Virus record (IMG/VR): IMGVR_UViG_3300023235_000008
Span: 124,001-188,000 of that record
Direction: 5' to 3' (one strand)
DNA: 64,000 bases
Both the position numbers and the translations under genes were made by a program. Below, piece after piece: positions 15,803 through 61,416 of this stretch. Within the stretch, counting starts at the first letter, position 1; each line of letters opens with the position of its first letter. The notes beneath the pieces are model-generated. The model was not told where the DNA came from. It ran no database searches and saw nothing but the letters and a program-made list of their open reading frames with translations.

Positions 15803-16024
15803 CTATTGGTTTCCACATGGGTAGTGATAATCCCGCTCGGTTCGCATATAGAGGATCGTGTCCGGGATTTTCTATACGAAAATAGCAAGTAGCAGTTCTT
15901 TTATTACTCACATGATAGGGTTCACCACATAGCGCGGCATGATACATGCGCAATTATCACAAGTTCTATCCAATACAGGAATAGACTTTAATGCTTCCCA
16001 AAACTGTTCTTTATTTAATGTCAT
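15792..16024 (-). pseudogene. FW-tag CxxC microgene with a 2-bp frameshift
   Basis: MTLNKEQFWEALKSIPVLDRTCDNC; removing one GC at ~15948-15951 continues MYHAALC…C…MWKPIDEI*, coupled to the start at 15802. Confidence 0.7.
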
Positions 16025-17716: not shown

Positions 17717-17925
17717 ATCGGTTTTCTACTTGTGATTTTTTTCGCTATCAAAATGACCTCGTAATCTTCTGCTTCTTTTCTTCTTTTGAAATCTGCTGGG
17801 TCTTCACACAAACTATCAAAGAAATCTTTTTTATCACGGCATTCTATTTCTTCGGGGGTTATTTCTACCGCCGCTTCATCAATGCGTGTTAATAAATCTT
17901 TAAAAAAATCGCTATCGTCAGTCAT
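17713..17925 (-). CDS. Microprotein with two FF variants of the tag
   Basis: DSDFFKDLL and DKKDFFDSLCEDP. Confidence 0.55.
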   Translation of the reverse strand: MTDDSDFFKDLLTRIDEAAVEITPEEIECRDKKDFFDSLCEDPADFKRRKEAEDYEVILIAKKITSRKPI

Positions 17926-18121
17926 TATATTTCCATTCCCATTTACTTCCAAGTTGTTGAAGTTGAAGTTTACACATAGTTCTTGCGTATTTGTTATCCG
18001 TTATCGGAAAGTCACAGTGCGACAAGTCATATGGATTGCCGTCCTCGGGCAAATACTTGCAACTTTCGCAAGACTTTACGCCATCCCATTCCAAGGCTTT
18101 CCAAAACTTATCTTTATTCAT
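17918..18121 (-). CDS. FW-tag microprotein, CxxC/WxW class
   Basis: MNKDKFWKAL…CESC…C…C…WEWKYND. Confidence 0.8.
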   Translation of the reverse strand: MNKDKFWKALEWDGVKSCESCKYLPEDGNPYDLSHCDFPITDNKYARTMCKLQLQQLGSKWEWKYND

Positions 18122-19298: not shown

Positions 19299-19531
19299 TT
19301 ATTAAGGTATCCCAAAACGCTGCCTTCTTTGATTTCTTCTTGCGGTCTATGTATATTTTTTTCATAAAAAATCTTCCTGCATTCACAACACGCTATTTCT
19401 TGTTCAATAATCATATATGGTTCTGAATCTTTGATTTTGACTTCTTTGGTTTCTCGGTTTACAACGAAACCGGCACCGCACCCACATCGCAACGGATTAC
19501 TTAAAGCATTCCAAAACTCGTCTTTATTTAT
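19295..19531 (-). CDS. FW-tag zinc-ribbon microprotein with ATA at the expected start
   Basis: ATA-NKDEFWNALSNPLRCGCG…CCEC. Confidence 0.65.
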   Translation of the reverse strand: MNKDEFWNALSNPLRCGCGAGFVVNRETKEVKIKDSEPYMIIEQEIACCECRKIFYEKNIHRPQEEIKEGSVLGYLNK

Positions 19532-20838: not shown

Positions 20839-21113
20839 CTAAACTTTCCATTTATTCTAAACTTATAATCATTATACCATTTACTCCCACACCGCTCACA
20901 TGTTGGCTGAAGGGTGCCCATGTCAGGTTGTTTTTGATGCCACGTCCAATCATTCGGGTATTTTGGTTGTGCTTTGTATACAGTATACGGAAAAGTAAAT
21001 ATCGGATGACCGTTTTCGCACTCAGCCGTTTCACCACCATACGCATATACCTTACTATGGTCTATTGACAATGCTTCAATAAAAGATTCTTTGCTTATAG
21101 CGTTTTGTACCAC
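20835..21113 (-). CDS. Tag-variant zinc-ribbon microprotein (start GTG 21113 or ATA 21098)
   Basis: SKESFIEAL…CENGH…CERCG. Confidence 0.65.
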   Translation of the reverse strand: MVQNAISKESFIEALSIDHSKVYAYGGETAECENGHPIFTFPYTVYKAQPKYPNDWTWHQKQPDMGTLQPTCERCGSKWYNDYKFRINGKFR

Positions 21114-22432
21114 GTGACAAGTTCCTCTGGAAATGTTTCTTCAAATAGTTTACCGCGGCGAATGTCATACTGTGTATAAAACTGTTTGAAATCGTGCTGC
21201 CTTGCTTCTACATCAATGGGGGCTGGTTCTCGTAGATAATCAATCAATCGTTCAATGTGATCTATTTCATGTGCGTGTAATAGTTTTGGGTCTTGTTTCA
21301 TTAACCATCCACCAAGGGCTGCACGGCGGGTTGAACGGATTTCTTCGGGAAGAACCAAGCAAGATTGAAAGCTCGGGAATCTAAGTATATTTAGTGTAAA
21401 ACTAGGTTGTTTACCCACAATCCAATGCTTTTGTCTTAACATAATAAGATGGTCAAGCATATCAGTTAGTGTCCACAAACACAATGCATTAACCGTGCAC
21501 ATAACACTGACATCATTGAATGTGCCATCGGCAAGAAGCGCATCCAAGCGTGATGTCCACTGATCGTAATCCAATCCATCACGAATATATTCGGCGTGTG
21601 CGTCTGTCGCTTCGCAACTAGTATACAATGTGCCGAAGTTAATAACATAATCATTGATAAGTCTATTAAATAATACGTCCGAACATCCAAGGTTTGAGTT
21701 CATTGAAATAGGTGGATACTTGAAAACGCTATCAGCACTATTTTTATAATCAGCATAAATCATATCAAGCAGTTTCCAAAAGTCCTGCGACATGGTTGGT
21801 TCACCGCCCGTAATACGCAACTCCTGCAACGATCCCTTTAAGTCGCTTTCCCACCACTTAAAGAACGCATCGACATATTGATTTGGTTCACCTACCTTGA
21901 AAGGTTGTGAAGCAGCATGTGTATGCGTAAAGTGATTGCGTCCGTCAGTTACTAAGCCTTCGTATGGACCGTTTTCTTTGATATCTTTTGCCCACGTTGT
22001 AGAAAACGCAGGGTTACAATACGAACAAGCAAAGTTACAAGTACGATCAAATGATATCTCTAGCGTCTTTAAGTCAACGTCTTGTTGTGGATTTGTTTTG
22101 TATGCAGTAAGGTTTTCCGACCAATCATAAATCTTTGATTTGTATACACGGTCAGGAACAGCATCAGTTTCCATATCCATCACTTTCCAACAGTAGTCGC
22201 AACCTTTAGGACGTTCACCACGCACCATTAACTCACGGTCGTGTTTCTTTTCCTTGGTGTTATGTAATAGCTTTGGATTGTTTACAACATCGTCAGATAT
22301 TTGATGTGCAGGGGGATGGTGACACGATGTAGTTTGACCGCTGCCTAACCATATAGTAGCGTTATACCATTTCGCCGAACAAAAGCTTGGCGATAGTTTA
22401 TCCAATACTTTTTTGTAATCTTTATCGTTCAC
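21095..22432 (-). CDS. Radical SAM enzyme with N-terminal twitch/SPASM-like domain
   Basis: FCSAKW…SCHHP…CDYCW; CNFACSYC; GGEPT. Confidence 0.9.
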   Translation of the reverse strand: MNDKDYKKVLDKLSPSFCSAKWYNATIWLGSGQTTSCHHPPAHQISDDVVNNPKLLHNTKEKKHDRELMVRGERPKGCDYCWKVMDMETDAVPDRVYKSKIYDWSENLTAYKTNPQQDVDLKTLEISFDRTCNFACSYCNPAFSTTWAKDIKENGPYEGLVTDGRNHFTHTHAASQPFKVGEPNQYVDAFFKWWESDLKGSLQELRITGGEPTMSQDFWKLLDMIYADYKNSADSVFKYPPISMNSNLGCSDVLFNRLINDYVINFGTLYTSCEATDAHAEYIRDGLDYDQWTSRLDALLADGTFNDVSVMCTVNALCLWTLTDMLDHLIMLRQKHWIVGKQPSFTLNILRFPSFQSCLVLPEEIRSTRRAALGGWLMKQDPKLLHAHEIDHIERLIDYLREPAPIDVEARQHDFKQFYTQYDIRRGKLFEETFPEELVTWYKTL

Positions 22433-22679
22433 TGAACATTATTCCAATCCGTTTCTGTTCTTTTTTGTATTGTAGAACGCTATGAAAATGGCTTTTCCAC
22501 GATTCTTGTTTTTCAGGATCGCTTACAATCTCGTCACAATCCTTACAAACTTCACATAACTTATAAATCATATACAGCTTTTTTTGTTTGCCTACCGTAA
22601 CTGTTGTGTTGGCGGCTTTGATGAGGATTGTAGGATGAATGCATTTAGTCAAACCATTCCAAAACTGTTCCTTATCCAT
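22422..22679 (-). CDS. FW-tag Cys-containing microprotein
   Basis: MDKEQFWNGLTKCIH…CEVCKDC. Confidence 0.75.
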   Translation of the reverse strand: MDKEQFWNGLTKCIHPTILIKAANTTVTVGKQKKLYMIYKLCEVCKDCDEIVSDPEKQESWKSHFHSVLQYKKEQKRIGIMFSER

Positions 22680-22788
22680 AAGGTTCCCATTCTTCACCAG
22701 TGAAAATCAACAATCCTTTTTCTTCGTCGTGGATTATTTCACCTTCAAATGGCACTACTGGCGGTGGCGAGGGCGTATCATCTGTCAT
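22672..22788 (-). CDS. 38-aa microprotein consisting of one tail-fibre-type motif (not in ORF track)
   Basis: MTDDTPSPPPVVPFEGEIIHDEEKGLLIFTGEEWEPYG; overlaps both neighbours. Confidence 0.65.
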   Translation of the reverse strand: MTDDTPSPPPVVPFEGEIIHDEEKGLLIFTGEEWEPYG

Positions 22789-24142
22789 ATTTGTTGCTCC
22801 TATACATACAATCATCCCAGAACTCAATCATCTCTGGAAACGTTTCTAAGAAGTTAGTGCCCCTACGGTTATCGTGTTCATTGAAGAATCGATAGAAGTT
22901 AACACGTGCTTCATTTAAATCTTTCTCGCCCATAGGAGTTTTCATATGGTCAAGGTTTCTCACCATCTTGGCAGCTTCGTAATCCTTGAATCCATCATAA
23001 CAAGTAGGACAAGACTCTGGACTATTACCTAAGTATTTTACCATATTTTCAAGCTGAAATCTATATGATTCGGGCAATATTTGAATCGATTGCCATACTG
23101 GATCAGTAAGAACTGGGATGTCAAACCACACACGCTGATAATCGTTGCTGTAAATCTTACGAAGACCAAGGATAGCGGTAAACAACTCAGGGAGACTAGT
23201 GATACTAAGGTTATTTAGGGTAATAATAAATGTAACACTATTCCTATGTGGAATGTCGTGTAAGAATGTATTGACGTTATCCCATAAACGATTGAAGTCA
23301 AGCCCGTGTCGAATATACTCAGCCTTTGAACCAAATGCATCCAATGAAACAAACTGCATAAAATGTTCTACATTCTCGCCGTCGCAAATACGTTTCGTAT
23401 AATCCATATACTTGTCAAAGATTTTAGGCTCTACACTAAAGTTGCTCGTTACGTTTAAGTGAAGGTCTGGTTTTGGATTTTCTAAAACATAGTCAAATAC
23501 TTTATAGGTGTTCGGGTCCATTAATGGTTCACCTCCTGTCATTCTGAAATGACGCAATGTTGGATACATTGCTGCCCAATCTTCCCAAAACTTTTCTACA
23601 TATGGATTATGTTCACGTTGTGGGATTGGGCGACGGTCACCAGCAAAATGCGCAGGATGGTTGTGCGGGGTAATGGTTGGCCACGCACCTTGTGATTTTG
23701 TTTCTGCCATCCATGATGAACTATATTGTGGCGAACAATAGCTACACTTTAAGTTACAGGCGTTATTAAAGTTCACCTCAACATACGATGGATTGACAAC
23801 GCCGCCCGCAACAACCTTATCAAAGTTATCCATTGCCCAAGGCTCACCACTACGATAGTGACGGTCTGACAGATTTCCTTGGTCTTCCATCTTCCAGCAA
23901 TAATCACAACCAGTAGGTCGCTTACCCGCAACCATCATTTGCTTTTGGATATCTTTTTCGGATGTTTCGTTTAACGTTTCACGTTTCAAATCCATCTTGT
24001 GCGGTGGCGGATGATAACATGAGTTAGTATGACCTGTTGTTAGGTGAAGGCTGGTTTGTAACCATTTAGCCAAGCAGAATGTTTCGGAAACATCGTCCAG
24101 TTTCTTCTTGGCGTGTAATGCATCGTCGTTATAGTTACTCAC
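22778..24142 (-). CDS. Radical SAM enzyme with N-terminal twitch/SPASM-like domain
   Basis: FCLAKW…SCYHP…CDYCW; CNLKCSYC; GGEPL. Confidence 0.9.
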   Translation of the reverse strand: MSNYNDDALHAKKKLDDVSETFCLAKWLQTSLHLTTGHTNSCYHPPPHKMDLKRETLNETSEKDIQKQMMVAGKRPTGCDYCWKMEDQGNLSDRHYRSGEPWAMDNFDKVVAGGVVNPSYVEVNFNNACNLKCSYCSPQYSSSWMAETKSQGAWPTITPHNHPAHFAGDRRPIPQREHNPYVEKFWEDWAAMYPTLRHFRMTGGEPLMDPNTYKVFDYVLENPKPDLHLNVTSNFSVEPKIFDKYMDYTKRICDGENVEHFMQFVSLDAFGSKAEYIRHGLDFNRLWDNVNTFLHDIPHRNSVTFIITLNNLSITSLPELFTAILGLRKIYSNDYQRVWFDIPVLTDPVWQSIQILPESYRFQLENMVKYLGNSPESCPTCYDGFKDYEAAKMVRNLDHMKTPMGEKDLNEARVNFYRFFNEHDNRRGTNFLETFPEMIEFWDDCMYRSNKYDR

Positions 24143-25053
24143 CAGTTCTCCCGCTTTCTGATTATATCAATCTCGGTTGTCATAAAGTCTTCCTGTACGT
24201 GATTCTTTTTATAGAAGTGTTTAAAAAACTTTGATTGGTCACTATCATATCGCACCAATGGGATATTCAATCGTGACTTAACAATATCAATGGTTGCTTT
24301 GATATATCTATCATCGTTATTATTCGCATAACCATCGTATTGCATTTTCAATACGTCGAAGTCTTGAACGCCCGTATAATCCCAATCGGTTAGCATAACG
24401 GCGTGTAATCCGAATAAAGCACCATCCATTGCTGAAACACCAAACTCGGCGTCGGCTCCTGTATTCAACCATACCATAAGATTATCAAGGTTCTTATCGT
24501 GAACCATTTGCTCAAACTCTGGTAGTGTAGGACGAACACCTTTATTCAGACACATCTTTACGCCTTCACGAAACCCTGCTCTCCAAGCATTGAACTCACT
24601 TTGATTGGGATGCGTAGTTCCGTAAACATTCCACATAGCGTGATAGTTAGGGTCATAGCAAAACTCTACGTTGTTTTCATCTGACCCATCACTATTTTCG
24701 TGCGTTCGCATATTCATAATGAAATCACGATGCCAAATACTAATACCGCCGTTGCCGTATCTCAATCCATTTATTGCATTGATTGCCTTCCAACGATATG
24801 CACTTGGTACATCAGGTGCTTCAAATGTTTGATTAAAGAAGTTTGGATCAGGCATATGGTCACCATCAATCAACACAAACCATTCGGTTTCACTGATTTC
24901 AGCTGCCGCTTTGTGTGCGGAATCACTGCCTTTTACACCATCGACACGATTTGCCCATGGCACCATATTCTGGATTTCTACCCAAAACTCTTCTTTTTTT
25001 GGTTCGTCAAATGTTAGATAGACCACATCAAGGTCTGCAACATCAATCTTCAT
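24139..25053 (-). CDS. GT-A fold glycosyltransferase-like protein
   Basis: GVKGSDSAHKAAA, DxD motif IDGD, NGLRYGNGG, AWRAGFREGVKM. Confidence 0.7.
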   Translation of the reverse strand: MKIDVADLDVVYLTFDEPKKEEFWVEIQNMVPWANRVDGVKGSDSAHKAAAEISETEWFVLIDGDHMPDPNFFNQTFEAPDVPSAYRWKAINAINGLRYGNGGISIWHRDFIMNMRTHENSDGSDENNVEFCYDPNYHAMWNVYGTTHPNQSEFNAWRAGFREGVKMCLNKGVRPTLPEFEQMVHDKNLDNLMVWLNTGADAEFGVSAMDGALFGLHAVMLTDWDYTGVQDFDVLKMQYDGYANNNDDRYIKATIDIVKSRLNIPLVRYDSDQSKFFKHFYKKNHVQEDFMTTEIDIIRKRENW

Positions 25054-25222
25054 ATTCTACCCAAAAGTCTTTTTCAAAATCAAACGTATATTGAATGTCG
25101 GTAGTAGTATCTCGGTATACGTGAATACCAATGCCGATATTCTTGTCTGCCTGTAAATAACTCTTATTAGGCTGCGGTGGCATTTGTAATACTTGCCAAA
25201 ACTTATCTCTGCTTATGTTCAA
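25043..25222 (-). CDS. FW-tag microprotein (PPQP class)
   Basis: SRDKFWQVLQMPPQP…FEKDFWVE; TTG start assumed. Confidence 0.7.
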   Translation of the reverse strand: MNISRDKFWQVLQMPPQPNKSYLQADKNIGIGIHVYRDTTTDIQYTFDFEKDFWVEYED

Positions 25223-25400
25223 TCCATTTATCCTTTTCATAATTAAAAACCCATTTTAAACCCGTCTGTATATCTACCCAAATAGTAACCATAGGAAGTT
25301 CTTTATTATATATACCGAGCTGATATACCGTCAACATACTTTCTTCGCTCGGCTGTGGGGGTTCGCCTAACCCTTCCCAAAAATCTTCTTTACTTAACAC
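25203..25400 (-). CDS. FW-tag microprotein (PPQP class)
   Basis: GTG-LSKEDFWEGLGEPPQP…YEKDKWIE. Confidence 0.7.
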   Translation of the reverse strand: MLSKEDFWEGLGEPPQPSEESMLTVYQLGIYNKELPMVTIWVDIQTGLKWVFNYEKDKWIEHKQR

Positions 25401-25539
25401 AAATCCATTCTTTTCCATTCCAAATCTCCAATCCACCTGTGTCGTTGTTATAAAATACGGAACCCACTGGGCGGGTCGGCGGTGGTGCCTTCAATGCTTC
25501 CCAAAAATCTTCTTTATTCAAAGTCTTTTCGGTATTCAT
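25390..25539 (-). CDS. FW-tag microprotein carrying a tail-fibre-type motif
   Basis: LNKEDFWEALKAPPPTRPVGSVFYNNDTGGLEIWNGKEW. Confidence 0.75.
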   Translation of the reverse strand: MNTEKTLNKEDFWEALKAPPPTRPVGSVFYNNDTGGLEIWNGKEWICVK

Positions 25540-25861
25540 AGAAGTCTTCGGTGCCGATGAAGTATGGGTTATTTTTTCTAGTGCCATACATTCCAGTCTC
25601 CGATTTGACAAGGTTGTATGTTTGTGGCTTAGATGGCGTTTTAATCTCGCCATCAATGATTTTATTATCACTTCTTATACTTTCCCATACGCTGCGCTCA
25701 ACGATAATGAAATCACCTTCGGGTGGTTCAACATTGTATTCAATAGCGACTTGTTTAAGGATATCGCCAGTTTCCTTGTTATAGTATAACCTATATTCAG
25801 GCGTAAAGTCAATAACTGGTTCAGCATCAAATAGAACTAATCCTTCTAAAAAGTTACTCAA
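25514..25861 (-). CDS. Hypothetical protein (EYRLYYNKETG motif)
   Basis: ORF in operon; TTG start at 25861 assumed from overlap. Confidence 0.65.
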   Translation of the reverse strand: MSNFLEGLVLFDAEPVIDFTPEYRLYYNKETGDILKQVAIEYNVEPPEGDFIIVERSVWESIRSDNKIIDGEIKTPSKPQTYNLVKSETGMYGTRKNNPYFIGTEDFYEYRKDFE

Positions 25862-25997
25862 AATCTTCCTCTCTATATTCTTCTCCAAATATCTCTTTTA
25901 ATCCCGGCATTAACTGTCGCAATACAGCAGCACGGCGAATAGCCTCTTTACTTTTCACTGGATTTTTTAAAGTTTTCCAAAACTCATGTTTATTCAT
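25854..25997 (-). CDS. FW-tag microprotein carrying a capsid-N-terminus-like peptide (47 aa, not in ORF track)
   Basis: MNKHEFWKTLKNPVKSKEAIRRAAVLRQLMPGLKEIFGEEYREEDFE. Confidence 0.75.
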   Translation of the reverse strand: MNKHEFWKTLKNPVKSKEAIRRAAVLRQLMPGLKEIFGEEYREEDFE

Positions 25998-26185
25998 TTC
26001 TTGTTCCATTCCCAGTGCTTACGATCTCCCGTTGCACTCACTAATATACTCACACAATCCACGTGTCCCGGCGCTGTTGCGTGTTTACAACTAAAACACG
26101 TTTTATCGTTTCCTAATAGAAACCAAAACTAGTTATCGTTTCCTAATAGAAACCAAAACTCTTCTTTACTACAATCGTTGTTCGT
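25994..26185 (-). pseudogene. Inactivated FW-tag CxxC/WxW microgene
   Basis: ACG-NNDCSKEEFWFLLGNDN*FWFLLGNDKTCFSCKH…C…WEWNKK; ACG at the start position and a TAG created by a duplication. Confidence 0.75.
26103..26160. repeat. 28-bp exact tandem duplication (period 30)
   Basis: ttatcgtttcctaatagaaaccaaaact at 26103-26130 and 26133-26160. Confidence 0.95.
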
Positions 26186-27020
26186 ATCGTCTGATGAGTT
26201 CGTCACTGCAAAAATCCTTCTGTTGATAATGGAATGGAAACATTTGATAGTATCCTCCCACAATAAAATCCATATCTTCCGTCAACGCCCAACTCACCAT
26301 ATCCGTCCACTGATTGGAATGAAAGCCCTGTAGTTCTGGCTTCATATGAACAAAGGTCGGTTGAACACCCGGCATATAACAACGTTCTTCACCAATCATC
26401 AATGCAGCTAACGCATATACTTCATCGGTTGTTGGGCGTTCAATACGGCAGTTCTTTAAAATATTATCCCGATACATTGACCAGTTCTCAAATATTTCTT
26501 TAGCCGCCATAAAAAAGTCAGCCATTGTCTTTGAATATCTGAAATAACTAAAACCATTATATGTATTTAGAAGGCTGTTATCATCGAATACTTTTCGGAA
26601 TCGGCGGTCAGTAATAAGGTTGCCACGATAATCAACTACGTCCGTAGTTATACAAATATCCTTGGCTCTCATATGATCCCACCAATGTGAAACATCACGT
26701 GTGAAAATCATATCAACATCAAGGTTAACTGTCTCTTTAAATGGCGTAGCGTGGTACAGTTTCCAAGCATTAGCCAACTTCCATTCATCGCCAGCAGCGG
26801 CGTCACCGAAAGGTATATCAACAATGTAATCAAATACTTTGCGATGTTTATCGGTGATTTGCGCTTTAGTCTTTTCATCAACGGCGATAGCATACTTGTT
26901 AATGCGTTGTGTTGCCTTGATAGAAAGGGCTTGTAAATATGCTATACGCAAGTAATCAACATCGCTGTTCTGAACAAAAGCAAAATATCCTTGCTGGTCT
27001 TTGAACTGTTCTTTATTCAT
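26169..27020 (-). CDS. GT8-like glycosyltransferase
   Basis: TPFKETVNLDVDMIF (DxD), TTDEVYALA, FVHMK, FHYQQK. Confidence 0.75.
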   Translation of the reverse strand: MNKEQFKDQQGYFAFVQNSDVDYLRIAYLQALSIKATQRINKYAIAVDEKTKAQITDKHRKVFDYIVDIPFGDAAAGDEWKLANAWKLYHATPFKETVNLDVDMIFTRDVSHWWDHMRAKDICITTDVVDYRGNLITDRRFRKVFDDNSLLNTYNGFSYFRYSKTMADFFMAAKEIFENWSMYRDNILKNCRIERPTTDEVYALAALMIGEERCYMPGVQPTFVHMKPELQGFHSNQWTDMVSWALTEDMDFIVGGYYQMFPFHYQQKDFCSDELIRRYEQRL

Positions 27021-27216
27021 TGTTCCATTCCCATTTATCATTGCCGCCAGCTTGACGTTGATCTACCATACCGCATCTAGTGCATCTATCGCACACGTCA
27101 AGATCATTGTAGTCCGCATCCCTCCCGATAATATGCAAAGTATCTTCCCATTTACAGTTGCCGCATACTCTTTCAGCAGGTTCACATAAAGTTTTCCAAA
27201 ACTCCTGTTTATTCAT
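27013..27216 (-). CDS. FW-tag microprotein, CxxC/WxW class
   Basis: MNKQEFWKTLCEP…CGNC…CDRCTRC…WEWNNE. Confidence 0.8.
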   Translation of the reverse strand: MNKQEFWKTLCEPAERVCGNCKWEDTLHIIGRDADYNDLDVCDRCTRCGMVDQRQAGGNDKWEWNNE

Positions 27217-27424
27217 TTTCACCATCCCAATGCCAATGGTCAGCTGCTCGTCTGATTTCCCGCGGGGGTATACCCGATATAGCACGAACGCAAGTATACT
27301 TAACGTGTAGACTACATTCCATGCCAAGGCTAGGTCCAGCGTCCATCATATGCGAACAGTTATTACACGTATGTGTCGATGGTTCACGCAGTGTGTCCCA
27401 AAACTTTTCTTTATCTTTATTCAT
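27209..27424 (-). CDS. FW-tag microprotein, CxxC/WxW class
   Basis: MNKDKEKFWDTLREP…CNNC…C…C…WHWDGENE. Confidence 0.8.
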   Translation of the reverse strand: MNKDKEKFWDTLREPSTHTCNNCSHMMDAGPSLGMECSLHVKYTCVRAISGIPPREIRRAADHWHWDGENE

Positions 27425-27632
27425 ATTTTCCATTCCATTCATATATACTATAATGACGGACGTATGTGTAATCGCCGTTTTCTTTTTCTCGTTTTAACGC
27501 CATCATAGCATCATTAAAGTTACAGGAAAAACAAGGTGACGGTGCATTTTTTGATTTTCCTTCATGAATACAAGTGTTACAACTCGGCTTTGGGCTTTTT
27601 AATGTTTCCCAAAACTTTTCTTTATCGTTCAT
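27417..27632 (-). CDS. FW-tag microprotein, CxxC/WxW class
   Basis: MNDKEKFWETLKSP…CNTC…CFSC…YEWNGKYE. Confidence 0.8.
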   Translation of the reverse strand: MNDKEKFWETLKSPKPSCNTCIHEGKSKNAPSPCFSCNFNDAMMALKREKENGDYTYVRHYSIYEWNGKYE

Positions 27633-27819
27633 CGACACCATTCCATTCCCAATAATCTTCAGTAATAAAGAAACCTTCAGTAAAGAAACGAAACCTACGA
27701 TGCTTAATACAATCTGCGTCCAGTGAACACCCTTGGTCTACCAAATGAATACAGTTTCGGCAGTTATGGTGTGTTGGTTCACGCAATGCTTTCCAAAACT
27801 TTTCTTTATCTTTATTCAT
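27622..27819 (-). CDS. FW-tag microprotein, CxxC/WxW class
   Basis: MNKDKEKFWKALREP…CRNC…C…C…WEWNGVDER. Confidence 0.8.
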   Translation of the reverse strand: MNKDKEKFWKALREPTHHNCRNCIHLVDQGCSLDADCIKHRRFRFFTEGFFITEDYWEWNGVDER

Positions 27820-27825
27820 ATAAGA

Positions 27826-28086
27826 TTATGGAAAGACAGGCAGGGGTTCATCGTCGTCGGTGTCGTCTTTGCCATTCCATTTCCAATAACTGTATTCGCC
27901 GTGCTGTTCACTCACGTGTGCGCTTTTACAACGACCACAAAATGCACTACCATTCACATTACCAAAATCGTGATACGAATATCTTTCGGGAGAATAGAAA
28001 CCGGGACGTGTACAAGTACCACATGATTTTGCAGGTGTTTTTAAATCTTGCCAGAACTTTTCTTTATCATCGAGGTTTTTATACAT
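27826..28086 (-). CDS. FW-tag microprotein, CxxC/WxW class
   Basis: DDKEKFWQDLKTP…CGTC…CGRC…WKWNGK. Confidence 0.8.
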   Translation of the reverse strand: MYKNLDDKEKFWQDLKTPAKSCGTCTRPGFYSPERYSYHDFGNVNGSAFCGRCKSAHVSEQHGEYSYWKWNGKDDTDDDEPLPVFP

Positions 28087-28088
28087 TA

Positions 28089-28970
28089 TTATTTTTTCTT
28101 TCCGGTGCCTGATAACTGCGTCGGTATATATGGACAGTAATAAAATCCTTCATCCATCACTTCCGTTTTACCACGTAACCCATCCCAAAACAGTTTCTTT
28201 CTATTAAGAATATCAATCTGTTTTATAAGCGAAGGTTTATTCATAACGTGTAAATCAAGACCATTTACTTTGGTTTGATATTCCTTGCCATTATTATCAT
28301 ATTCAATGACGACCGTGCCATCCTGCCTAATATCTACCACTTCTTCTTGTGTTCCGACCGAAGCCAATGGAAACGTGAAATGGTTTTCTGTATCATTATA
28401 TCCCGAAAGCAACTGTAATGCAATACTTAATGCAAAATCATTTCGATATGGGGTGGGTCTGAAGTTGAATAAATGCCCGTAATAATGATAGTTTTGGCGA
28501 ACTTCTTGCATCATATCAAATACCGACTTGGAAAACTCAGTCTTTTTAAAATAGATACACGTTGCCCAACGCATAGGAAAACTTGTCTTGCTCATCATTC
28601 TATCAGATGCAAATGTATTTGTGCCCGTAACGTCATATACCTTATCGGCGCATTGAAACTCATGCGCTGAACCGAAATATTTCTTCAAGTTATCTGACAT
28701 AATCAAATAGTCAGCATCAAGTAATAATGTTTCATCATACGGCGAAAGGGAATATGCGGTCATGCGATCCGTATTATGCCAATCCACTTGTTCATACGTA
28801 TTATCACGCCATATAAATGTTCGACTGTTAGCGTTTGTCGGATTTCCAGTGATAATCGTGGTCGGAATATTCAAATGATGAAGTATTAGCTGGCGATTAA
28901 ACTCGGCAATCTTTTCATAATCAATCTGATCATTATTGTAAGCGAAGATTAATGCGCCCTTTGTTGTCAT
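28089..28970 (-). CDS. GT8-like glycosyltransferase with a fused FW-tag/capsid-like C-terminal tail
   Basis: SPYDETLLLDADY (DxD), YRNDFALSIA, DLHVMNK; tail RKKLFWDGLRGKTEVMDEGFYYCPYIPTQL. Confidence 0.75.
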   Translation of the reverse strand: MTTKGALIFAYNNDQIDYEKIAEFNRQLILHHLNIPTTIITGNPTNANSRTFIWRDNTYEQVDWHNTDRMTAYSLSPYDETLLLDADYLIMSDNLKKYFGSAHEFQCADKVYDVTGTNTFASDRMMSKTSFPMRWATCIYFKKTEFSKSVFDMMQEVRQNYHYYGHLFNFRPTPYRNDFALSIALQLLSGYNDTENHFTFPLASVGTQEEVVDIRQDGTVVIEYDNNGKEYQTKVNGLDLHVMNKPSLIKQIDILNRKKLFWDGLRGKTEVMDEGFYYCPYIPTQLSGTGKKK

Positions 28971-29191
28971 TGTTTATGCTCAATCATAGATTTATGATAT
29001 TTGTGAGACATATTGAAAAAGAATAAATCCTTTTCACTCTTGAACTTTAAATAATACATTCCGCCCCAATGACCTTCAATATCAAATGACCATTTAAAAC
29101 GATCAAACGTTTGAAGGTTCACAAGCGTTATGTGCCACTCGTCTATATCGTTAAGGGCTGAAAAGAACTCAAGTTTATGCCATTTGCTCAT
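28967..29191 (-). CDS. Microprotein with C-terminal FKSEKDLFFF module
   Basis: ATGA-coupled at both ends. Confidence 0.65.
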   Translation of the reverse strand: MSKWHKLEFFSALNDIDEWHITLVNLQTFDRFKWSFDIEGHWGGMYYLKFKSEKDLFFFNMSHKYHKSMIEHKQ

Positions 29192-29490
29192 TTAGGAAAG
29201 TTCCTTAAAATGTTCGCCATATCTTTAATCGTGTCGTGTTTTTCTTTTGCCTCTACTTCTTCGGGACGAATGATACGATAGGTTTCAAGCTGAATACGAT
29301 AATATTCTAAGACTTCACTGTTTGAATATCGCCCCGAATAGTCGTAACCATCGGGGTCCAGCTTTTCAAGTTCGGCAATATGCTTTAGAATATTTTCTTT
29401 TGCTCGTTCTTCAATCAACGAATAAGGCGGTGGCAATGGACACTGTAATGCATTCCAGAACTCTTCTTTAGATAAATCATCTTCAATCAT
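29188..29490 (-). CDS. FW-tag microprotein, helical payload
   Basis: LSKEEFWNALQCP. Confidence 0.7.
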   Translation of the reverse strand: MIEDDLSKEEFWNALQCPLPPPYSLIEERAKENILKHIAELEKLDPDGYDYSGRYSNSEVLEYYRIQLETYRIIRPEEVEAKEKHDTIKDMANILRNFPK

Positions 29491-29822
29491 AGTTGGTCAG
29501 TCTTTCGAATCTTACGTAGTTGTTCGTATTCGTTATGCCAATCGTTCATTACTTCATTGTATTTTGTGATTAAACCATGAAGAAAATGGTGGACATCATC
29601 TATTTTGATTGGGTTGTTGTACGAATCTTTTAGAAAATATTCATCTGGGTAGGTTCCAGTATATTCATCAAACCGCATTAATGTCTCAGCGAATGATATC
29701 AACTCAGGGGTGACTTTGAATAAGCCGCCATTATACGCAAGCGTAAGAGCTTGTTCTGCTCTTTCCGCTGCGGTTTGTTTTAATACTTTATGATCTAGAT
29801 GTTTCTTAGCAATACTTTCCAT
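29487..29822 (-). CDS. Hypothetical protein, first gene after a consensus promoter
   Basis: YNGGLFKVTPELISF, DSYNNPIKI. Confidence 0.75.
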   Translation of the reverse strand: MESIAKKHLDHKVLKQTAAERAEQALTLAYNGGLFKVTPELISFAETLMRFDEYTGTYPDEYFLKDSYNNPIKIDDVHHFLHGLITKYNEVMNDWHNEYEQLRKIRKTDQL

Positions 29823-29827
29823 AGGTG

Positions 29828-29856
29828 ATTATATCACGTATTGGAATATATGTCAA
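29828..29856 (-). promoter_or_regulatory. Perfect sigma70 promoter
   Basis: TTGACA-N17-TATAAT with extended TG; ATG only 5 nt downstream. Confidence 0.85.
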
Positions 29857-29858
29857 TA

Positions 29859-30812
29859 TTAAATACCAGATGTTTGTGCAGCACCGACTGGTGTTACTAC
29901 TGCGGTTCCCCAAACAGGAGTTCCCCAAGTATTTGTAAGATATGTGGTTTCCGGTGGATAATACGAGAATGTGGTGGTTGTTGTTCCAGTCACGTTATCT
30001 TCAAGCGTGTATACCTGTTTATTGAAGGCTTGGTCGGCTGCATCATCCTGAAGCAAAACGGTAATGGTAATAACCGTTCCGTTGTTTCCAAGACCATCGG
30101 TAGCGTCATCCGTGTTTGATTGCATACTAACACGGTAATAGTTTGCTGTATATGGTGCGGTATCCGCAGCTTGCTGGAACATTATCGTATCCGAGTTATC
30201 TAATAAATCATAATAACCAGTGGCAGTAAGGTTGGTTACAGGTGTACCGGTTCCGCCAGACTTTCCGCCAGATTGTGCGTTCAATAGATAGTTTGCTGCC
30301 TTCGTGCAAAGGTCGTTCCATTCGTTGTCTTTTGCATTACCAGCACCATGAACCGTCGAAATATCGATATATCCACCAGCGTTGAAGAAATAACGAGCTT
30401 CGTTTCCGCCAGCAAATGTAAGAGTATTTGAGATTGTAAGTGATGTAATCCAATCGGTGGTATTGGCACCAGTTGAGCTAGATACAGTGCCATTCGATAC
30501 TTTATTAAGACGACTAGCACCGATAGATGTAATGTTACCCGACAGTGCGGCATAAGCAGCGATAGGGTCAGTTGCAACAGGACTAGTAATAGCAGTAATA
30601 CCAGTGGCTTGATGACTAGCAGAACTTGATATTCTTGCTAATAATGTTGACCATTGCGTAGCGGTAACCGTATTTCCAGCCGTGACAGATGATAAAGTCG
30701 TTGATTGACCATAACCAGTGTCGCCAGTTCCTGTTCCCCATACGCTATTAACATCGGTTGCAAACCCATTATAATGAGTGTCTAGAATAACGTCGCCTGA
30801 AGTATATGCCAT
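29859..30812 (-). CDS. Virion structural protein (Thr/Gly-rich, tail-associated)
   Basis: MAYTSG…GYGQ…ARYFFNAGG; located in the structural module. Confidence 0.7.
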   Translation of the reverse strand: MAYTSGDVILDTHYNGFATDVNSVWGTGTGDTGYGQSTTLSSVTAGNTVTATQWSTLLARISSSASHQATGITAITSPVATDPIAAYAALSGNITSIGASRLNKVSNGTVSSSTGANTTDWITSLTISNTLTFAGGNEARYFFNAGGYIDISTVHGAGNAKDNEWNDLCTKAANYLLNAQSGGKSGGTGTPVTNLTATGYYDLLDNSDTIMFQQAADTAPYTANYYRVSMQSNTDDATDGLGNNGTVITITVLLQDDAADQAFNKQVYTLEDNVTGTTTTTFSYYPPETTYLTNTWGTPVWGTAVVTPVGAAQTSGI

Positions 30813-30837: not shown

Positions 30838-32169
30838 TTAGTTTACAGTAACGAAGGCTTCAATATTTCCATCAGCGCCATCTTCTAGTGCACGTCCAAC
30901 CACATTGAATGCAGTTGCTTCACCCGCCTGTGCGGCACGTGCAACGCCATTACCAGCAGAAACCAAACGGTCACCTTTACGAACTTGTCCAACTACACAT
31001 ACTGGGCAACGTCCTGTTAACGCTACGGCTGTTCCGCCTTCTAATCCAGCGTTCATAAGGTGGGCTGGGTTTGTTGAAACAACACCAAATACCGTATCTG
31101 AAAGTTCTTCATTCGCTAATGTAATCTCGTCAATGCCGCCGAGAGCAACCAATGTTCCCGGAGCATATACTGAATCAGCGGCGAAGTTTTCCGCAACGTC
31201 GGCGTATTGTGCCTGTGTTGATGTTCCGTTAAATGTCGTCGCATAAATCGTAGCGAATACATTACCAGAAGCACCAATGTTATGTGTATTTGTTGTTCCC
31301 GGCAAGATTGCCGAGGTAGCACCGTCAATAAGTGCAACAGTAGTGTTAACACCGCCGTCATTAATATTGAACTTGAGGTCACCATCTAGTGTCGTGTTAC
31401 GAACTGTTACATCCGATCCAGCAACACCAATCGTTAAATCACTGTCTGCGCCGATAGTAATACCGCTATCATTTAGAACACCAAATGTGCCCGATGTGGT
31501 ATCAGCTTCGTCAGAACGTAAAAACTGCGTTGAGTTGATTGTGTCTAATGTGTCTGCGTTTGATACGGTTCCGATGAACTGTGCACCAGCAACTGTCGTG
31601 CTTAGATTGTAACCCGGCTTAACCGTAGCAAATCCTGAGATAGCAACCTGTGGAGTGAATTCGCTATCTTTAGAAATGATTGCTACAATAGCATCAGATA
31701 CAAACATCTTAACAACAACGTGGTCCGATGCAAGGGAGTCGGTAATAGTATCAATGACTGGTCCAGACTGACCCGTGCCTGTTGTAAACGCTGGTCCAAT
31801 AAGTGTGAATGACGTGCCGTTATAAACTTTCAACTGGCTGTTCGTCGTATCCCACCAAAGGTCACCAGTAACAACTGGCGTTGGCTCAGTTGCAGATGAT
31901 GTTGAACTTGAAATCGTTTTCCAAGCCGTTCCGGTGTAAACTTGCATCAAACTTGATGTAGTATTCCAGAATAACTGACCCGCAATAGGTGCACTTGGTG
32001 CTGATGTATTCGCAAAGTTTTCAAGAAGCTTAACGAAATCTTCGTTTAGAATCTCCCCATAACCTGCGTAGTTCTTACCGATAAGTGTAATATCAGTCGT
32101 TGTATCAATAGTACCGTCTGCGACTGTAGTTAGCACGGCACCTGTTGTTTTATTTATTGTGTAGGCGAT
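30838..32169 (-). CDS. Tail fibre/baseplate-associated protein with apparent ATC start
   Basis: GGAGA SD 6 nt before ATC-AYTINKTTG; LIGKNYAGYGE, LLENFA, GQLFWN/GDLWWD repeats, AQYADVAE, VALTGRCPV. Confidence 0.8.
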   Translation of the reverse strand: MAYTINKTTGAVLTTVADGTIDTTTDITLIGKNYAGYGEILNEDFVKLLENFANTSAPSAPIAGQLFWNTTSSLMQVYTGTAWKTISSSTSSATEPTPVVTGDLWWDTTNSQLKVYNGTSFTLIGPAFTTGTGQSGPVIDTITDSLASDHVVVKMFVSDAIVAIISKDSEFTPQVAISGFATVKPGYNLSTTVAGAQFIGTVSNADTLDTINSTQFLRSDEADTTSGTFGVLNDSGITIGADSDLTIGVAGSDVTVRNTTLDGDLKFNINDGGVNTTVALIDGATSAILPGTTNTHNIGASGNVFATIYATTFNGTSTQAQYADVAENFAADSVYAPGTLVALGGIDEITLANEELSDTVFGVVSTNPAHLMNAGLEGGTAVALTGRCPVCVVGQVRKGDRLVSAGNGVARAAQAGEATAFNVVGRALEDGADGNIEAFVTVN

Positions 32170-32955: not shown

Positions 32956-35900
32956 TTATTCCGCTAACAAAGTTCTTTTAGCAACAAGATATTGTGCCTG
33001 AAGCGTGCTGCTATTCTGTAATCCCTGACCGTCAGCTGCTGTGCCGTCACCACTTGTATACCATACTTGGGTATGGGTATTGCCGGGGATTTGCTGTCCA
33101 CTTACGTCAAAAACATTGCTACCTAATGCGTGAACGCTTTTAGCACCAGTTCCTTGTGTTCCACGACGAAGGCGACTGACTGTATTCGCATCAGTATCTC
33201 TTTCCCAATACGTAATACGCTCACCCGCAATCATTAAGAAACCGGGAACGCCAGAATCAGTATCAGGTGGTGCAAGACTTGTGGCATTTTCCACATAAAT
33301 CACATCATCTTCAAGTGTAAACTCTTGAACAAGGGTAGTTGTATTGTCTTGTGTGATACGATAATATTCAGTGTTACCAAGCATATCGTTGAAAATACGG
33401 AAGCCTGTTGACGGCTGTGATATTTTTTCACTAAATCCAGACACTACGATAATACTACTTGCGGTTAACGTTGTTGAATCGGCGATGATAATCTCACTAC
33501 CAAGAACACTGTAATCTACCGCACTATGCAGCTTTGTCCCGTCCACTGTAACCCATAGGTAATCGGTGTTAGTAACTGGACGGTCTAGAGTAAAGCGTTG
33601 TTCTGTGCCGACACCCTTAAACACATTGGTTTGAATACGCTGTGGATCGTGATTTGCAAACTGAACAATACGAATAATATCATCTGCCGCAAGTGTAACG
33701 CCAGCATCAATAGTAAGGGTTGTTCCATCACTGCTTACAGTATATTCTGCATCGGTAGTAATGCCGATAACAACCGTATCCTGCGTGGTTGGTGTTCTAG
33801 CCGCAGAATCATCGCCGATAAAGGTTATTGAACGAATAGAACTGCCATCATATGCATTGGTTGTATAATCCTGCCCAGCCACCAAGTTTCTATATTGATC
33901 TACAGATTGGTCATATATGCCAACAATGATATCACTATTTTGAACCAAAGCTTGAGTTTCTTGTGCGGATGTAGGAACATTAAACGTAATGGTGTTACCA
34001 TCGCCGCTATAATAAACCGCATTTGCTGGCCGCAATCTCGAACCATTTACTTCAACAATCATATTTGCTTCAAATGGTTTTGCATACAGTGAAGTATTAT
34101 CAAGAGTAATAACTCGGGTTGAACCGTCGCTTGTTTCAAGCTGTTCAGTAACTTCGGAGAATGCCTGACGTACATCAGGATCAACATCATATAGAACAAT
34201 ATGAACGTGCTGACCTGCTGTCGGGGTAGATGAAAGAACAACGTCAATAAAGTTTCCATTGACAACGATATTCGGGTTAAGACTTCTAACGCCATCTACC
34301 AGAACATATCCCTGTTCTACAACATCGGGATCAATAGGAACCGTAAAGGTATCCGTTATGCCATCTGCGGTAAAGCTTTTTTCAGCTACTGGATTTTCAC
34401 CCGTGTTACTAAACGAATATATATAAATAGTGTCATTTGATACGGGCACTGACACGAAGGTAACAATGCCGTTCGTGTAATCCACCGTAAAGTCGATGTC
34501 TTGGTATTGAACGCCACCAAGCGCAGTCCACACAAATATATTATCAACATCTTCAACCGATGAGCTGCCTTTGTAACCAAATGAGGCTGTTGAACCGTCA
34601 CTCACGTGAAATTCTGTATATATACGGGCTGCATTGCCGTCAAATTCTTGATCTTGCCCCGGTAACGTAAACACTTTAAGGTCGAGCGTATCGAACATTA
34701 TGCCCGGAACAAATTCCTCTGGAGAGTGTGAGTTATATACATCGATGTATTTTCCACCAACAATATCAATATCTTCTGGCGCAACACCCAATGCTGCATC
34801 GGAATAAGTTGAACGGATAATACTATCAATTGAACTTGCGCCACTGATAACGGCAATACCATTCTCGTCAATTTCAAATGCGTCAAATTCCTCAACATCA
34901 AATGCCCCCACATCAAAACCGGGATTTGCATTGAAATCTGGACCATATACTCGGACACCGGGGTAGTCTGTTCCGATTTGTAGCTGGGTTATATCGTTGC
35001 CGATCATTCCTTCAGTCGGTGTGTAATAAGCGGCTATTCTATCTGCTGCGCTAGTAAAGTCGCCATCTGCATAAACCGTGAGATTAGATGCATCGAAAGT
35101 GGCACTACTTGTGTAATCAGCAACAACTTCATACGCTTCACCAAGATAAGAAATAATCTGTGCGGCAGTATAAGCAGTATTTGCTTCCCATTCGACGATA
35201 TCGGATGAATATGCAATTCGATCAAACTTCAATATTGAATCAAATTCACGTACTTTGCCGTTAGTTAGTTGCAGATATATTTCAAGCCCTGTGCCCACGC
35301 CATCTATTTCAACGGTAGGAGTAGTTGTATACCCATTACCCTCATTGATAACTGTTAGCTGCGTAATCACACTGCCGTTGGTTTTTGCTTCAATTATAGC
35401 ACCTGAACCGCCGCCGCCAGTAACTGTTAATACGGGCGGAATTGTATACCCAATACCACTATTAAGAAGGATTGTAGACCCGACTGAATACCCATAGTTA
35501 TCGCCCCAAGGAACATTAAGACCTTGTTCCCAAAGTGCAAAATCGCTTGCTTTTTCACCAGATGGTTTGCGATAATAACCAAGGTCTGAATCGAAATAAC
35601 TGTGTACGTCGAAATCTGTCACATCACCATTCCACGGATCATCCTTGGTATATTCTAAAATATATTCACGAACATTTGTACGATACGGTTTGGCTTCGGC
35701 AATATAATCACTGATGTAATCTTGGTTATCACGCTGATAACTAGGATATTGATCAAGACCACGCAGTTTTTGCACAACCTTGATAAACGATGTCTTGATT
35801 AACCAGTCAGCATAAGGCTGTTCGGTTAGTAGATATTCAACCATAGTGAACCACAGACGATTCCATTCAACACGAATGTCTTCAACGAAGATATCGTTTT

Positions 35901-61341: not shown

Positions 61342-61416
61342 CAGGGTGTAGCTCAGTCTGGCCAGAGTGTCGGTCTTGGAGTCCGAAAGTCGCAGGTTCG
61401 AGTCCTGCCACCCTGA
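61342..61416 (+). tRNA. tRNA-Pro(TGG)
   Basis: Cloverleaf CAGGGTG/CACCCTG, TTCGAGT T-loop; no encoded CCA. Confidence 0.9.

What the first reader, a model, noticed from the sequence alone, without database searches (positions are those of the whole stretch)
28089..28208. gp23-like capsid peptide behind an FW tag on a glycosyltransferase tail
Seen: after the GT's last conserved motif the ORF continues LNRKKLFWDGLRGKTEVMDEGFYYCPYIPTQL. Recalled: T4-superfamily major capsid proteins carry a C-terminal motif like KG-x-x-x-x-DAG-x-[FY]-Y-[AC]-PY-[VI]-PLQ. Inference: a former stand-alone tag-plus-capsid-fragment cassette now fused to the GT. It could be a capsid decoy or could tether the GT to assembling heads. 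It is the second capsid-like payload and comes from a different capsid lineage.
Basis: partly seen in the sequence, partly recalled or inferred. Interest (0 to 1): 0.78.

Follow-up and report, generated by a model that had tools for sequence, protein, structure and literature searches.

The report
Capsid-protein fragment fused to a glycosyltransferase
A salt-lake jumbo phage carries a sugar-transferase gene whose last ~30 amino acids are a genuine but old, diverged piece of a T4-type major capsid protein; relatives lack this tail, and whether it does anything is unproven, although its relatives carry other capsid pieces on neighbouring small proteins.

Summary
ORF 28089-28970 (-) is a 293-aa GT-A-fold enzyme. 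None of 118 aligned homologues has its last ~33 residues. The core of that tail (G264-K292) matches the gp23-family capsid protein at T4 gp23 434-466, a P-domain beta-sheet segment: Pfam Gp23 is the top hit (E 0.01); tblastn matched 1395 phage records, and the 30 listed lie in capsid genes; alignment score is 82 against 28±4 for shuffles. I found the phage's own capsid gene 39 kb past the window. The tail is not a copy of it (50% aa, 51% DNA, no shared word over 7 nt). AlphaFold leaves residues 270-293 disordered.

The "FW tag" is not demonstrable: 3.1 bits against 11-39 for true tags.

A relative has a stand-alone ORF with a canonical FW tag plus a capsid spine-helix peptide. The small gene upstream of the transferase carries another capsid piece (gp23 96-131) in relatives. 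The capsid gene was the only one of 78 genes tested to leave fragment matches.

Best reading: a lineage-specific in-frame fusion, probably a tolerated by-product. A docking or decoy role remains open. Interest is moderate.

The parts
28089..28970 (-). Whole ORF, 293 aa: GT-A-fold transferase plus a unique C-terminal extension. The stop TAA at 28089-28091 overlaps the next gene's ATG (TAATAATG).
28197..28970 (-). Residues 1-258: nucleotide-diphospho-sugar transferase (GT-A) domain with invariant D85-x-D87. This part is shared with more than 1900 mostly viral homologues.
   Evidence: 1902 hits. (invariant columns). (pLDDT above 89). (GlyE, alpha-1,3-GalT, UGGT, LgtC, glycogenin; probability 1.0, TM 0.3-0.45). 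(Atlas clusters named nucleotide-diphospho-sugar transferase; structural matches cover residues 1-255 only).
28170..28205 (-). Junction, residues 256-267 (NRKKLFWDGLRG). It is FW-tag-like only in its second half, and is modelled as a continuation of the last helix (260-267, pLDDT about 66).
   Evidence: 3.1 bits. (E 0.53). (not significantly gp23-like)..
28095..28181 (-). Residues 264-292 (GLRGKTEVMDEGFYYCPYIPTQLSGTGKK): the gp23-family capsid segment. It corresponds to T4 gp23 about 437-466, and to 326-350 of the phage's own capsid protein. Residues 270-293 are predicted disordered.
   Evidence: (pLDDT below 50)
28967..29191 (-). Upstream neighbour, 74 aa (here called the 'SKWH' family, after its MSKWH start). 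In relatives its orthologues (109 and 139 aa) end in a 36-43-aa capsid N-fragment (T4 gp23 96-131). The window copy is truncated and lacks it.
   Evidence: (hhalign probability 98%, E 4e-14)
27826..28086 (-). Downstream neighbour, 86 aa: a canonical FW-tagged Cys-rich small protein. It is the next unit of the FW array.

Best explanation
SHOWN. The last ~30 residues of this GT-A transferase are a real fragment of a gp23-type major capsid protein. They correspond to the P-domain beta-sheet segment around the YY(A/C)PY motif. The fragment is joined in frame to the enzyme in this phage lineage only. It is not a recent copy of the phage's own capsid gene, and no close donor was found in the collections searched.

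INFERRED ORIGIN. The transferase was fused to the short ORF that followed it. In relatives that position holds a small FW-tagged ORF whose start overlaps the transferase stop, so a small indel is enough to fuse them. Small ORFs carrying capsid-derived peptides exist in this clade.

INFERRED FUNCTION. The enzyme works like its tail-less orthologues. The tail is a flexible appendage that is tolerated rather than required, a by-product of modular shuffling in this fast-changing accessory gene array.
For: - Homology.
- Uniqueness of the tail: and no small homologue.
- Real in independent assemblies, but with no sequence variation, so there is no sign of selection.
- Own capsid gene found at L198:11745-12938. 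The tail is 13/26 aa and 38/75 nt identical to it, and the longest shared word is 7 nt.
- No other site in the phage's own contig shares a tail 8-mer, and none of the three non-motif 8-mers was confirmed in another contig.
- AlphaFold pLDDT is below 50 for residues 270-293, while the enzyme domain is above 89.
- The capsid pieces on the neighbouring SKWH family are present, truncated or absent among close relatives, so they appear dispensable.
- One population variant has the invariant GVQP motif destroyed.
- The overlapping stop/start arrangement of the transferase and the next FW ORF is seen in relatives.
- Precedent: the T4 RefSeq annotation describes alt.-1/alt.-2 as an old partial duplication of a head-protein gene kept as small ORFs.
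Against: - Capsid specificity is hard to explain by random capture. Among 78 ORFs of at least 120 aa from the 106 kb of this genome that I hold, only the capsid gene gives fragment matches in the accessory arrays.
- Three different P-domain pieces occur on accessory proteins of this clade.
- Unrelated phages also have small non-capsid ORFs with the same motif (L187, L190).
- The tail keeps most family-invariant residues (G, G, E, D, YYCPY-I-P, G) even though its DNA is only 51% identical to the resident gene.
- It stays in frame up to the next gene's start.
Confidence: 0.45

Rival explanations
1. Functional capsid-mimic docking tag. The tail imitates one strand segment of the capsid protein's P-domain sheet. 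By strand complementation it brings the transferase to assembling or unfolded capsid protein, or to whatever normally binds that segment, for example to modify or ride with the head. The N-fragment and spine-helix peptides in relatives would be members of the same tag class.
For: - Only capsid-gene pieces turn up.
- All three pieces are P-domain elements. The tail covers T4 A455 and the spine-helix piece covers G292/V306/V307, the gp31-bypass positions, which the paper places in the P-domain sheet and spine helix (PMC9546572).
- The pieces sit at exposed C-termini or in payload positions, and the tail is flexible.
- The N-fragments of two diverged relatives (45% identical to each other by my own residue count, not a tool result) each keep the capsid consensus.
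- The window also encodes sugar-nucleotide enzymes, so virion glycosylation is conceivable.
Against: - No conservation data for the tail itself, which occurs in a single lineage.
- The pieces are variably truncated in relatives.
- Detection bias: only the most conserved capsid segments would be recognisable as fragments.
- The mimicked strands are buried in the folded capsid protein.
- No binding data.
Confidence: 0.33
2. Decoy or modulator for a factor that recognises conserved capsid segments. The factor could be a host abortive-infection sensor of the capsid protein (as Lit senses the Gol peptide of T4 gp23), EF-Tu, or the chaperonin.
For: - The relatives' N-fragment aligns to T4 gp23 96-131. 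From memory, the Gol region is residues 93-122, so the two overlap.
- The tail and the spine-helix piece cover the gp31-bypass positions.
- A 6-nt change within 9 nt at the GVQP motif separates otherwise identical genomes. This could reflect selection on recognition.
Against: - A peptide that mimics a trigger would be expected to activate rather than block such sensors.
- No defence gene context is known, and the host is unknown.
- No known anti-defence family matched, though padloc and anti-defence libraries were not searched.
Confidence: 0.1
3. Remnants of one capsid-gene paralogue that was split by insertion of the transferase gene. The 5' piece would be left on the upstream gene (as in relatives) and the 3' piece on the transferase (as in this phage).
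For: In L014 the N-fragment ends exactly where the transferase starts. In the window the C-fragment starts where transferase homology ends.
Against: - The two pieces are never seen in one genome.
- In L021 a paralogue separates the fragment-bearing gene from the transferase.
- The N-domain of the upstream family does not align to the capsid N-terminus: only the 36-column fragment aligns.
Confidence: 0.1
4. FW leader plus core: the tail is a fused substrate peptide for the neighbouring radical-SAM/SPASM enzymes (RiPP-like).
For: Five radical-SAM genes lie at 16011-24142. Four are followed at once by a small FW ORF and the fifth (21095-22432) by an FW-like variant. The tail is rich in Tyr and Cys.
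Against: - The tail's FW scores 3.1 bits against at least 11 for members, and it is not N-terminal.
- The 'core' is plainly capsid-derived.
- Many FW proteins look like folded small Zn-ribbon proteins with a conserved WEWNG end.
Confidence: 0.04
5. Chance resemblance to gp23.
For: The Pfam score is below the gathering threshold (15.7 against 24.4).
Against: - 0 of 2000 shuffles reach even 47, against the observed 82.
- The alignment falls on the same column in five capsid proteins.
- All 30 listed hits among 1395 matching records are in capsid genes.
Confidence: 0.01

Closest known systems
gp23-family (T4-type, Pfam PF07068) major capsid protein, P-domain beta-sheet segment around YY(A/C)PY (T4 gp23 434-466)
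   Same: The tail core aligns collinearly to this segment in T4-type and Phosso/PA5oct-type capsid proteins at 44-55% identity. It keeps G..G..E.D.G.YYCPY(I/V)P...G.
   Different: Only about 30 of 400-520 residues are present. One residue is inserted (V271). The Pfam score is below threshold. The fragment is fused to an unrelated enzyme. It is not the phage's capsid gene, which lies at L198:11745-12938.
T4 alt.-1/alt.-2: small ORFs that the T4 RefSeq record annotates as an old partial duplication of the head-packaged Alt protein gene
   Same: A piece of a head-protein gene is retained as, or within, small accessory ORFs in a variable region (annotation).
   Different: In T4 the duplicate lies next to its parent gene and is recognisably its 5' part. 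Here the piece is an internal 30-aa segment, about 75 kb from the parent gene (by contig coordinates), fused to a transferase, and far diverged.
Targeting peptides for capsid-like shells: the T4 capsid targeting sequence on internal proteins, and encapsulin C-terminal cargo-loading peptides (from general knowledge, not tested here)
   Same: A short terminal peptide on otherwise unrelated proteins, which could direct them to an HK97-fold shell. The tail is C-terminal and flexible, like encapsulin cargo peptides.
   Different: Known targeting peptides are not copies of shell-protein segments. The T4 sequence is N-terminal and is cleaved by the prohead protease. No binding or packaging evidence exists here.
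Gol peptide of T4 gp23, trigger of the Lit protease (PMC12926258)
   Same: A short conserved gp23 segment that has biological activity on its own. The N-fragment on the relatives' upstream gene overlaps the equivalent region.
   Different: Gol acts from within the real capsid protein as a trigger of host suicide. The window's tail is a different segment (434-466, not about 93-122).
Retaining GT-A glycosyltransferases of families GT8/GT6 (GlyE, LgtC, glycogenin, UGGT catalytic domain, alpha-1,3-GalT)
   Same: The fold of residues 1-258 and a DxD motif.
   Different: Only remote similarity: 8-14% identity, TM 0.3-0.45, no Pfam hit. The substrate is unknown. None of these enzymes has a capsid-like tail.

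Membership tests
gp23-family major capsid protein (PF07068) | Full-length HK97-fold protein of about 400-520 aa that reaches the Pfam gathering score | tested here: not met
   Only residues 264-292 match. The score is 15.7 bits against a cut-off of 24.4. The real capsid gene is elsewhere.
gp23-family major capsid protein (PF07068) | Collinear homology to a defined segment of the family (the fragment-of-family claim) | tested here: met
FW-tagged small proteins of this phage | Tag directly after the start codon, consensus (N/S)K(D/E)xFW(D/E/K/N)xL(K/R/S/Q)xP | tested here: not met
   The site is internal (residues 256-267), with L at -1 and no Pro at +7. It scores 3.1 bits against 11-39 for members.
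FW-tagged small proteins of this phage | DNA-level match to the conserved 5' coding profile | tested here: not met
   nhmmer gives E 0.53 against 1e-5 to 1e-11 for members
GT-A nucleotide-diphospho-sugar transferases | GT-A Rossmann-like fold | tested here: met
   The AF2 model has pLDDT 89.7. Foldseek gives probability 1.0 to GT8/GT6 structures. Atlas cluster names agree.
GT-A nucleotide-diphospho-sugar transferases | DxD metal/nucleotide-sugar motif | tested here: met
   D85 and D87 are invariant in 119 sequences (LLLDADY)
GT-A nucleotide-diphospho-sugar transferases | Glycosyl transfer activity and substrate | not testable with these tools
   Needs an enzyme assay
Capsid/shell targeting peptides (T4 capsid targeting sequence, encapsulin cargo peptide) | The peptide is necessary and sufficient for packaging into the shell | not testable with these tools
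   No virion proteome or binding data. The location is C-terminal, unlike the T4 sequence.
Recent partial duplicate of the resident capsid gene | High DNA identity to the phage's own capsid gene | tested here: not met
   38/75 nt, longest shared word 7 nt. No other site in the phage's own contig shares a tail 8-mer.

The most novel reading that the evidence does not exclude
This clade of salt-lake jumbo phages, and a few unrelated phages, would use short peptides copied from the P-domain core of their HK97-fold capsid protein as portable modules on accessory proteins. The three pieces are the N strand (Gol-equivalent), the spine helix and the C strands. The modules would dock the carrier onto assembling or unfolded capsid protein, or onto host factors that recognise those segments (chaperonin, EF-Tu, capsid-sensing defences). 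The transferase tail would be one such module, and the FW tag plus spine-helix ORF another.
Probability: 0.25. Interest if true: 0.8.

Novelty: new variant of a known kind. Interest (0 to 1): 0.55.

Why it matters
If the tail is only a relic, it is a clean, datable example of how fast-changing phage gene arrays build chimeric proteins from pieces of core genes. It also warns annotators that a weak 'Gp23' hit on a small ORF is not a capsid gene.

If the capsid-derived peptides are functional, they would be a new kind of module: self-mimicry of the capsid protein, used to target, regulate or shield. That would bear on three things:
- how accessory enzymes such as glycosyltransferases reach the virion;
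- how capsid folding is controlled;
- how phages deal with host sensors of conserved capsid segments.

Each of these can be tested with a 30-residue peptide.

Tried and rejected
- Megablast of 27000-30000 against cultured phages found no match.
- Pfam gave nothing for the transferase or its neighbours. PHROGs gave only phrog_1903, of unknown function.
- A word-index search with the 40-aa tail for small stand-alone homologues found none. The same search with the relative's 109-aa protein found only itself.
- An exhaustive HMMER search with the upstream family's N-domain returned only 5 representatives, so the family is tiny and clade-restricted.
- Idea: the tail is a silent cassette for gene conversion of the capsid gene. 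Rejected: 51% DNA identity, longest shared word 7 nt.
- Idea: the FW tag imitates the capsid protein's N-terminus (...NKWKPLLEGEG in T4). Rejected: the FW score matrix gives negative scores on six capsid N-termini.
- Idea: the upstream family is a truncated capsid paralogue. Not supported: hhalign aligns only the 36-column fragment.
- DNA-level search of the tail against all held loci found only codon-level matches at YYCPY in capsid genes.
- The first attempt to find the phage's own capsid gene, from a Phosso/PA5oct alignment, returned 80 other contigs. One look-up on the HNH gene was wasted on a 1.2-kb contig. The gene was then reached by walking.
- A scan for GFYYCPY in IMG/VR gave 13 sites: 2 true capsid genes, the phage's own tail, L187's small ORF, and 9 in short or non-capsid frames with no flanking capsid match. 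The heptamer alone is therefore not diagnostic.
- A profile search of PDB sequences with the transferase family found nothing.

Full report
**What is there**

On the minus strand, ORF 28089..28970 encodes 293 aa. Pfam finds nothing in it, and PHROGs finds only a weak hit to an uncharacterised family. It has 1902 homologues in the 5.8-billion-protein collection; most are 250-290 aa, and related clusters are almost all viral.

An AlphaFold model built on a 119-sequence alignment is confident for residues 1-258 (pLDDT above 89). Foldseek places that part among retaining GT-A glycosyltransferases: GlyE, alpha-1,3-GalT, the UGGT catalytic domain, LgtC and glycogenin (probability 1.0, TM 0.3-0.45). 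D85-x-D87 is invariant in the family. The ESM Atlas names the nearest clusters nucleotide-diphospho-sugar transferases, and its structural matches cover residues 1-255 only.

**The tail is an add-on**

Every homologue aligned ends 8-14 residues after the invariant DLHxMNK motif. The query runs on for about 33 more residues.

The fusion is real:
- The identical protein sits on 7 contigs from JGI, ENA and Logan, and a 99% variant sits on an eighth.
- Contigs from four additional salt-lake metagenome runs span the junction with no difference.

That sameness also means there is no variation from which to read selection.

**The tail is capsid-derived**

- For the 39-aa tail, the best of 24,736 Pfam families is Gp23 (PF07068): E 0.01, profile positions 306-330. 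The score is below the gathering threshold.
- tblastn against 50,697 phage genomes gives matches in 1395 records. All 30 listed hits are in major capsid genes, one of them annotated only as hypothetical. The best E is 9e-3.
- Local alignment gives F261-K292 against Aeromonas phage 65 gp23 474-505 (18/33 identical), and G264-G288 against Phosso and PA5oct capsid proteins (44-48%).
- A shuffle test gives 82 against 28.1±3.9 (0 of 2000; maximum 47). All five alignments fall on the same column.
- In T4 numbering the tail equals gp23 434-466. [quoted passage not shown] There, A455V removes the need for the gp31 co-chaperonin (PMC9546572).

**The FW tag**

About 20 small ORFs in the window start with a conserved (N/S)K(D/E)xFWxxLxxP tag.
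- A score matrix from 18 of them gives the tail site 3.1 bits. Members score 11-39 leave-one-out. The site ranks 27th of 58,291 six-frame positions.
- A DNA profile of the tags finds all members at E 1e-5 to 1e-11, and the tail site at E 0.53.
- The stretch ILNRKKLFWDGLRG is not significantly gp23-like either.

The second half (FWDGLR) is identical at 5 of 7 positions to the true tag FWDTLRE at 27403. The first half is not tag-like. A degraded tag is possible, but it cannot be demonstrated.

**The phage and its own capsid gene**

The window is positions 124,001-188,000 of IMG/VR contig IMGVR_UViG_3300023235_000008 (230,059 bp). It comes from salt-lake metagenomes. The nearest cultured relatives are the jumbo phages Phosso and PA5oct (44% identity in a DUF2201 protein).

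No capsid gene lies in the window. I walked rightward along the contig and reached the head module: a T4-type portal carrying an intein, an S77 protease, a 364-aa protein, and then a 397-aa Gp23-family capsid protein at L198:11745-12938. That protein is 66-67% identical to those of Phosso and PA5oct.

The tail matches residues 326-350 of this capsid protein at 13/26 residues. Codon-aligned DNA identity is 38/75, and the longest shared word is 7 nt. No other site in the phage's own contig shares an 8-residue word with the tail. In other IMG/VR contigs only the FYYCPYIP motif itself was found.

So the tail is neither a recent copy of the resident gene nor a usable partner for gene conversion. 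I cannot assign it to a capsid lineage: it is about equally far from the phage's own type and from the T4 type.

**Context that changes the picture**

1. The small gene just upstream of the transferase (window 28967-29191, 74 aa) belongs to a tiny clade-restricted family, here called SKWH after its MSKWH start. It has 5 representatives among 1.84 billion proteins.
   - In relatives the orthologues are 109 and 139 aa, and they end in a 36-43-aa segment homologous to the capsid protein's N-terminal strand region (T4 gp23 96-131).
   - Support: hhalign probability 98%, E 4e-14; 56-70% identity to the Phosso capsid protein; precomputed Pfam Gp23 hits.
   - Other members carry a shortened version or none at all.
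2. A relative has a stand-alone ORF (L020:8163-8465) with a canonical FW tag followed by a peptide that matches the capsid spine helix (T4 285-308). The score is 63 against 32±4, with 0 of 1000 shuffles reaching it.
3. Unrelated phages have small non-capsid ORFs with the same YYCPYIPL motif: a 116-aa ORF between SbcD and Rad50 (L187), and a 167-aa 'mini capsid protein' (L190).
4. I took 78 ORFs of at least 120 aa from the 106 kb of this genome that I hold. The capsid gene was the only one to give fragment matches in the accessory arrays of this phage and its relatives.
5. Two population variants of one relative are identical over the 774-nt transferase gene. In the upstream gene they differ by 6 nt within 9 nt, which changes the capsid-invariant GVQPL into GGVPV.

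**Interpretation**

Shown:
- The fusion is real and lineage-specific.
- The fragment is old or of foreign origin, and derives from the capsid P-domain.
- The FW tag is not demonstrable.

Inferred origin:
- In three relatives (L014, L021, L024) the transferase stop overlaps or abuts the start of the next small FW ORF.
- FW ORFs with capsid-derived payloads exist (L020).
- A small indel fusing the enzyme to such an ORF is therefore the simplest route.
- An alternative is a capsid paralogue split by insertion of the transferase. It fits the flanking positions of the two fragments, but the two are never seen together, and the upstream family's N-domain is not capsid-like.

Function. I give the tolerated by-product reading 0.45:
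- The tail is unique to one lineage.
- It is predicted disordered.
- The sister fragments are dispensable among relatives.

I give the functional capsid-mimic tag reading 0.33:
- Only the capsid gene leaves such fragments.
- The three P-domain pieces are complementary.
- Invariant residues are retained.

One caveat applies to the functional reading: only the most conserved capsid segments would be recognisable as fragments at all. A decoy or modulator role (0.10) and a radical-SAM substrate role (0.04) are less likely. Chance similarity is excluded.

**Novelty**

I found no paper describing capsid-protein fragments on phage accessory proteins. The nearest documented precedent is partial duplicates of head-protein genes kept as small ORFs (T4 alt.-1/alt.-2, annotation).

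The tail alone is a modest curiosity. The set of capsid P-domain peptides in this clade is the part worth following up.

Noticed in passing
window 14800-29900 (- strand), plus 51587 and 53879 (+): About 20 small ORFs share an N-terminal tag (N/S)K(D/E)xFWxxLxxP, conserved at DNA level too. Their payloads vary: many are CxxC...CxxC Zn-ribbon-like proteins ending in WEWNG. Variants with FI, FL or FF in place of FW occur at 21083, 811 and 17823.
   Followed up: partly
window 16011-24142 (- strand): Five radical-SAM genes lie in a row; a SPASM domain was detected in two of them, and there it precedes the radical-SAM domain. Four are followed at once by a small Cys-rich FW ORF and the fifth (21095-22432) by the FI variant at 21083. 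This could be a RiPP-like or an enzyme-partner arrangement. Next to them lie a carbamoyltransferase (11290-12912), a DegT aminotransferase (8857-10023) and an epimerase/dehydratase (8013-8930).
   Followed up: partly
L014:7675-8004, L021:5245-5664 (relatives); window 28967-29191: The clade-restricted small-protein family upstream of the transferase carries a gp23 N-strand fragment (T4 96-131, the Gol-equivalent region) at its C-terminus in some phages. In others it is truncated or absent.
   Followed up: yes
L012/L013/L015 vs L014, codons 91-94 of the 109-aa gene: Six nucleotide changes within 9 nt turn the capsid-invariant GVQPL into GGVPV. The genomes are otherwise near-identical: the transferase gene matches at 774/774 nt.
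   Followed up: partly
L020:8163-8465: A stand-alone ORF with a canonical FW tag (LTKEEFWEALQ) followed by a peptide homologous to the capsid spine helix (T4 gp23 285-308).
   Followed up: yes
L187:2956-3306 and L190:2608-3111 (unrelated IMG/VR phages): L187 has a 116-aa ORF between the SbcD and Rad50 genes that starts with a capsid-like ...MNTGFYYCPYIPLQM. L190 has a 167-aa 'mini capsid protein' with E-loop/spine-helix and YYCPYIPL segments but no A domain.
   Followed up: partly
window 26100-26160 (- strand): A 26-nt direct repeat (ttttggtttctattaggaaacgataa, twice, separated by ctag) places a TAG stop inside an FW ORF. That ORF abuts the end of transferase paralogue 26169-27041 and has no start codon of its own near the tag. 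It is either a broken FW gene or a recoding site.
   Followed up: partly
L198:5761-8703 (own contig, outside the window): The T4-type portal gene (980 aa) carries an intein (Pfam Intein_splicing between two Portal_T4 halves). The head module order is portal, 76 aa, 296 aa, S77 protease, 364 aa, capsid protein.
   Followed up: no
window 61342-63692: tRNA genes (Pro-TGG, Tyr-GTA, Glu-TTC, Phe-GAA) are interspersed with an HNH endonuclease ORF (63200-63613).
   Followed up: partly
window 32956-46059 (- strand): A 4367-aa ORF whose orthologues in relatives carry precomputed FG-GAP and CBM_5_12 hits. It is followed by fibre-like genes with a peptidase-S74-type C-terminal region (30838-32136).
   Followed up: no
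window 24139-25053, 26169-27041, 9962-11290: Further transferase-like genes in the same array: 26169-27041 shares phrog_1903 with the target, and 9962-11290 resembles 24139-25053. The first (24139-25053) has an internal KKEEFWVEI near its N-terminus, which scores 5.5 bits on the FW matrix.
   Followed up: no
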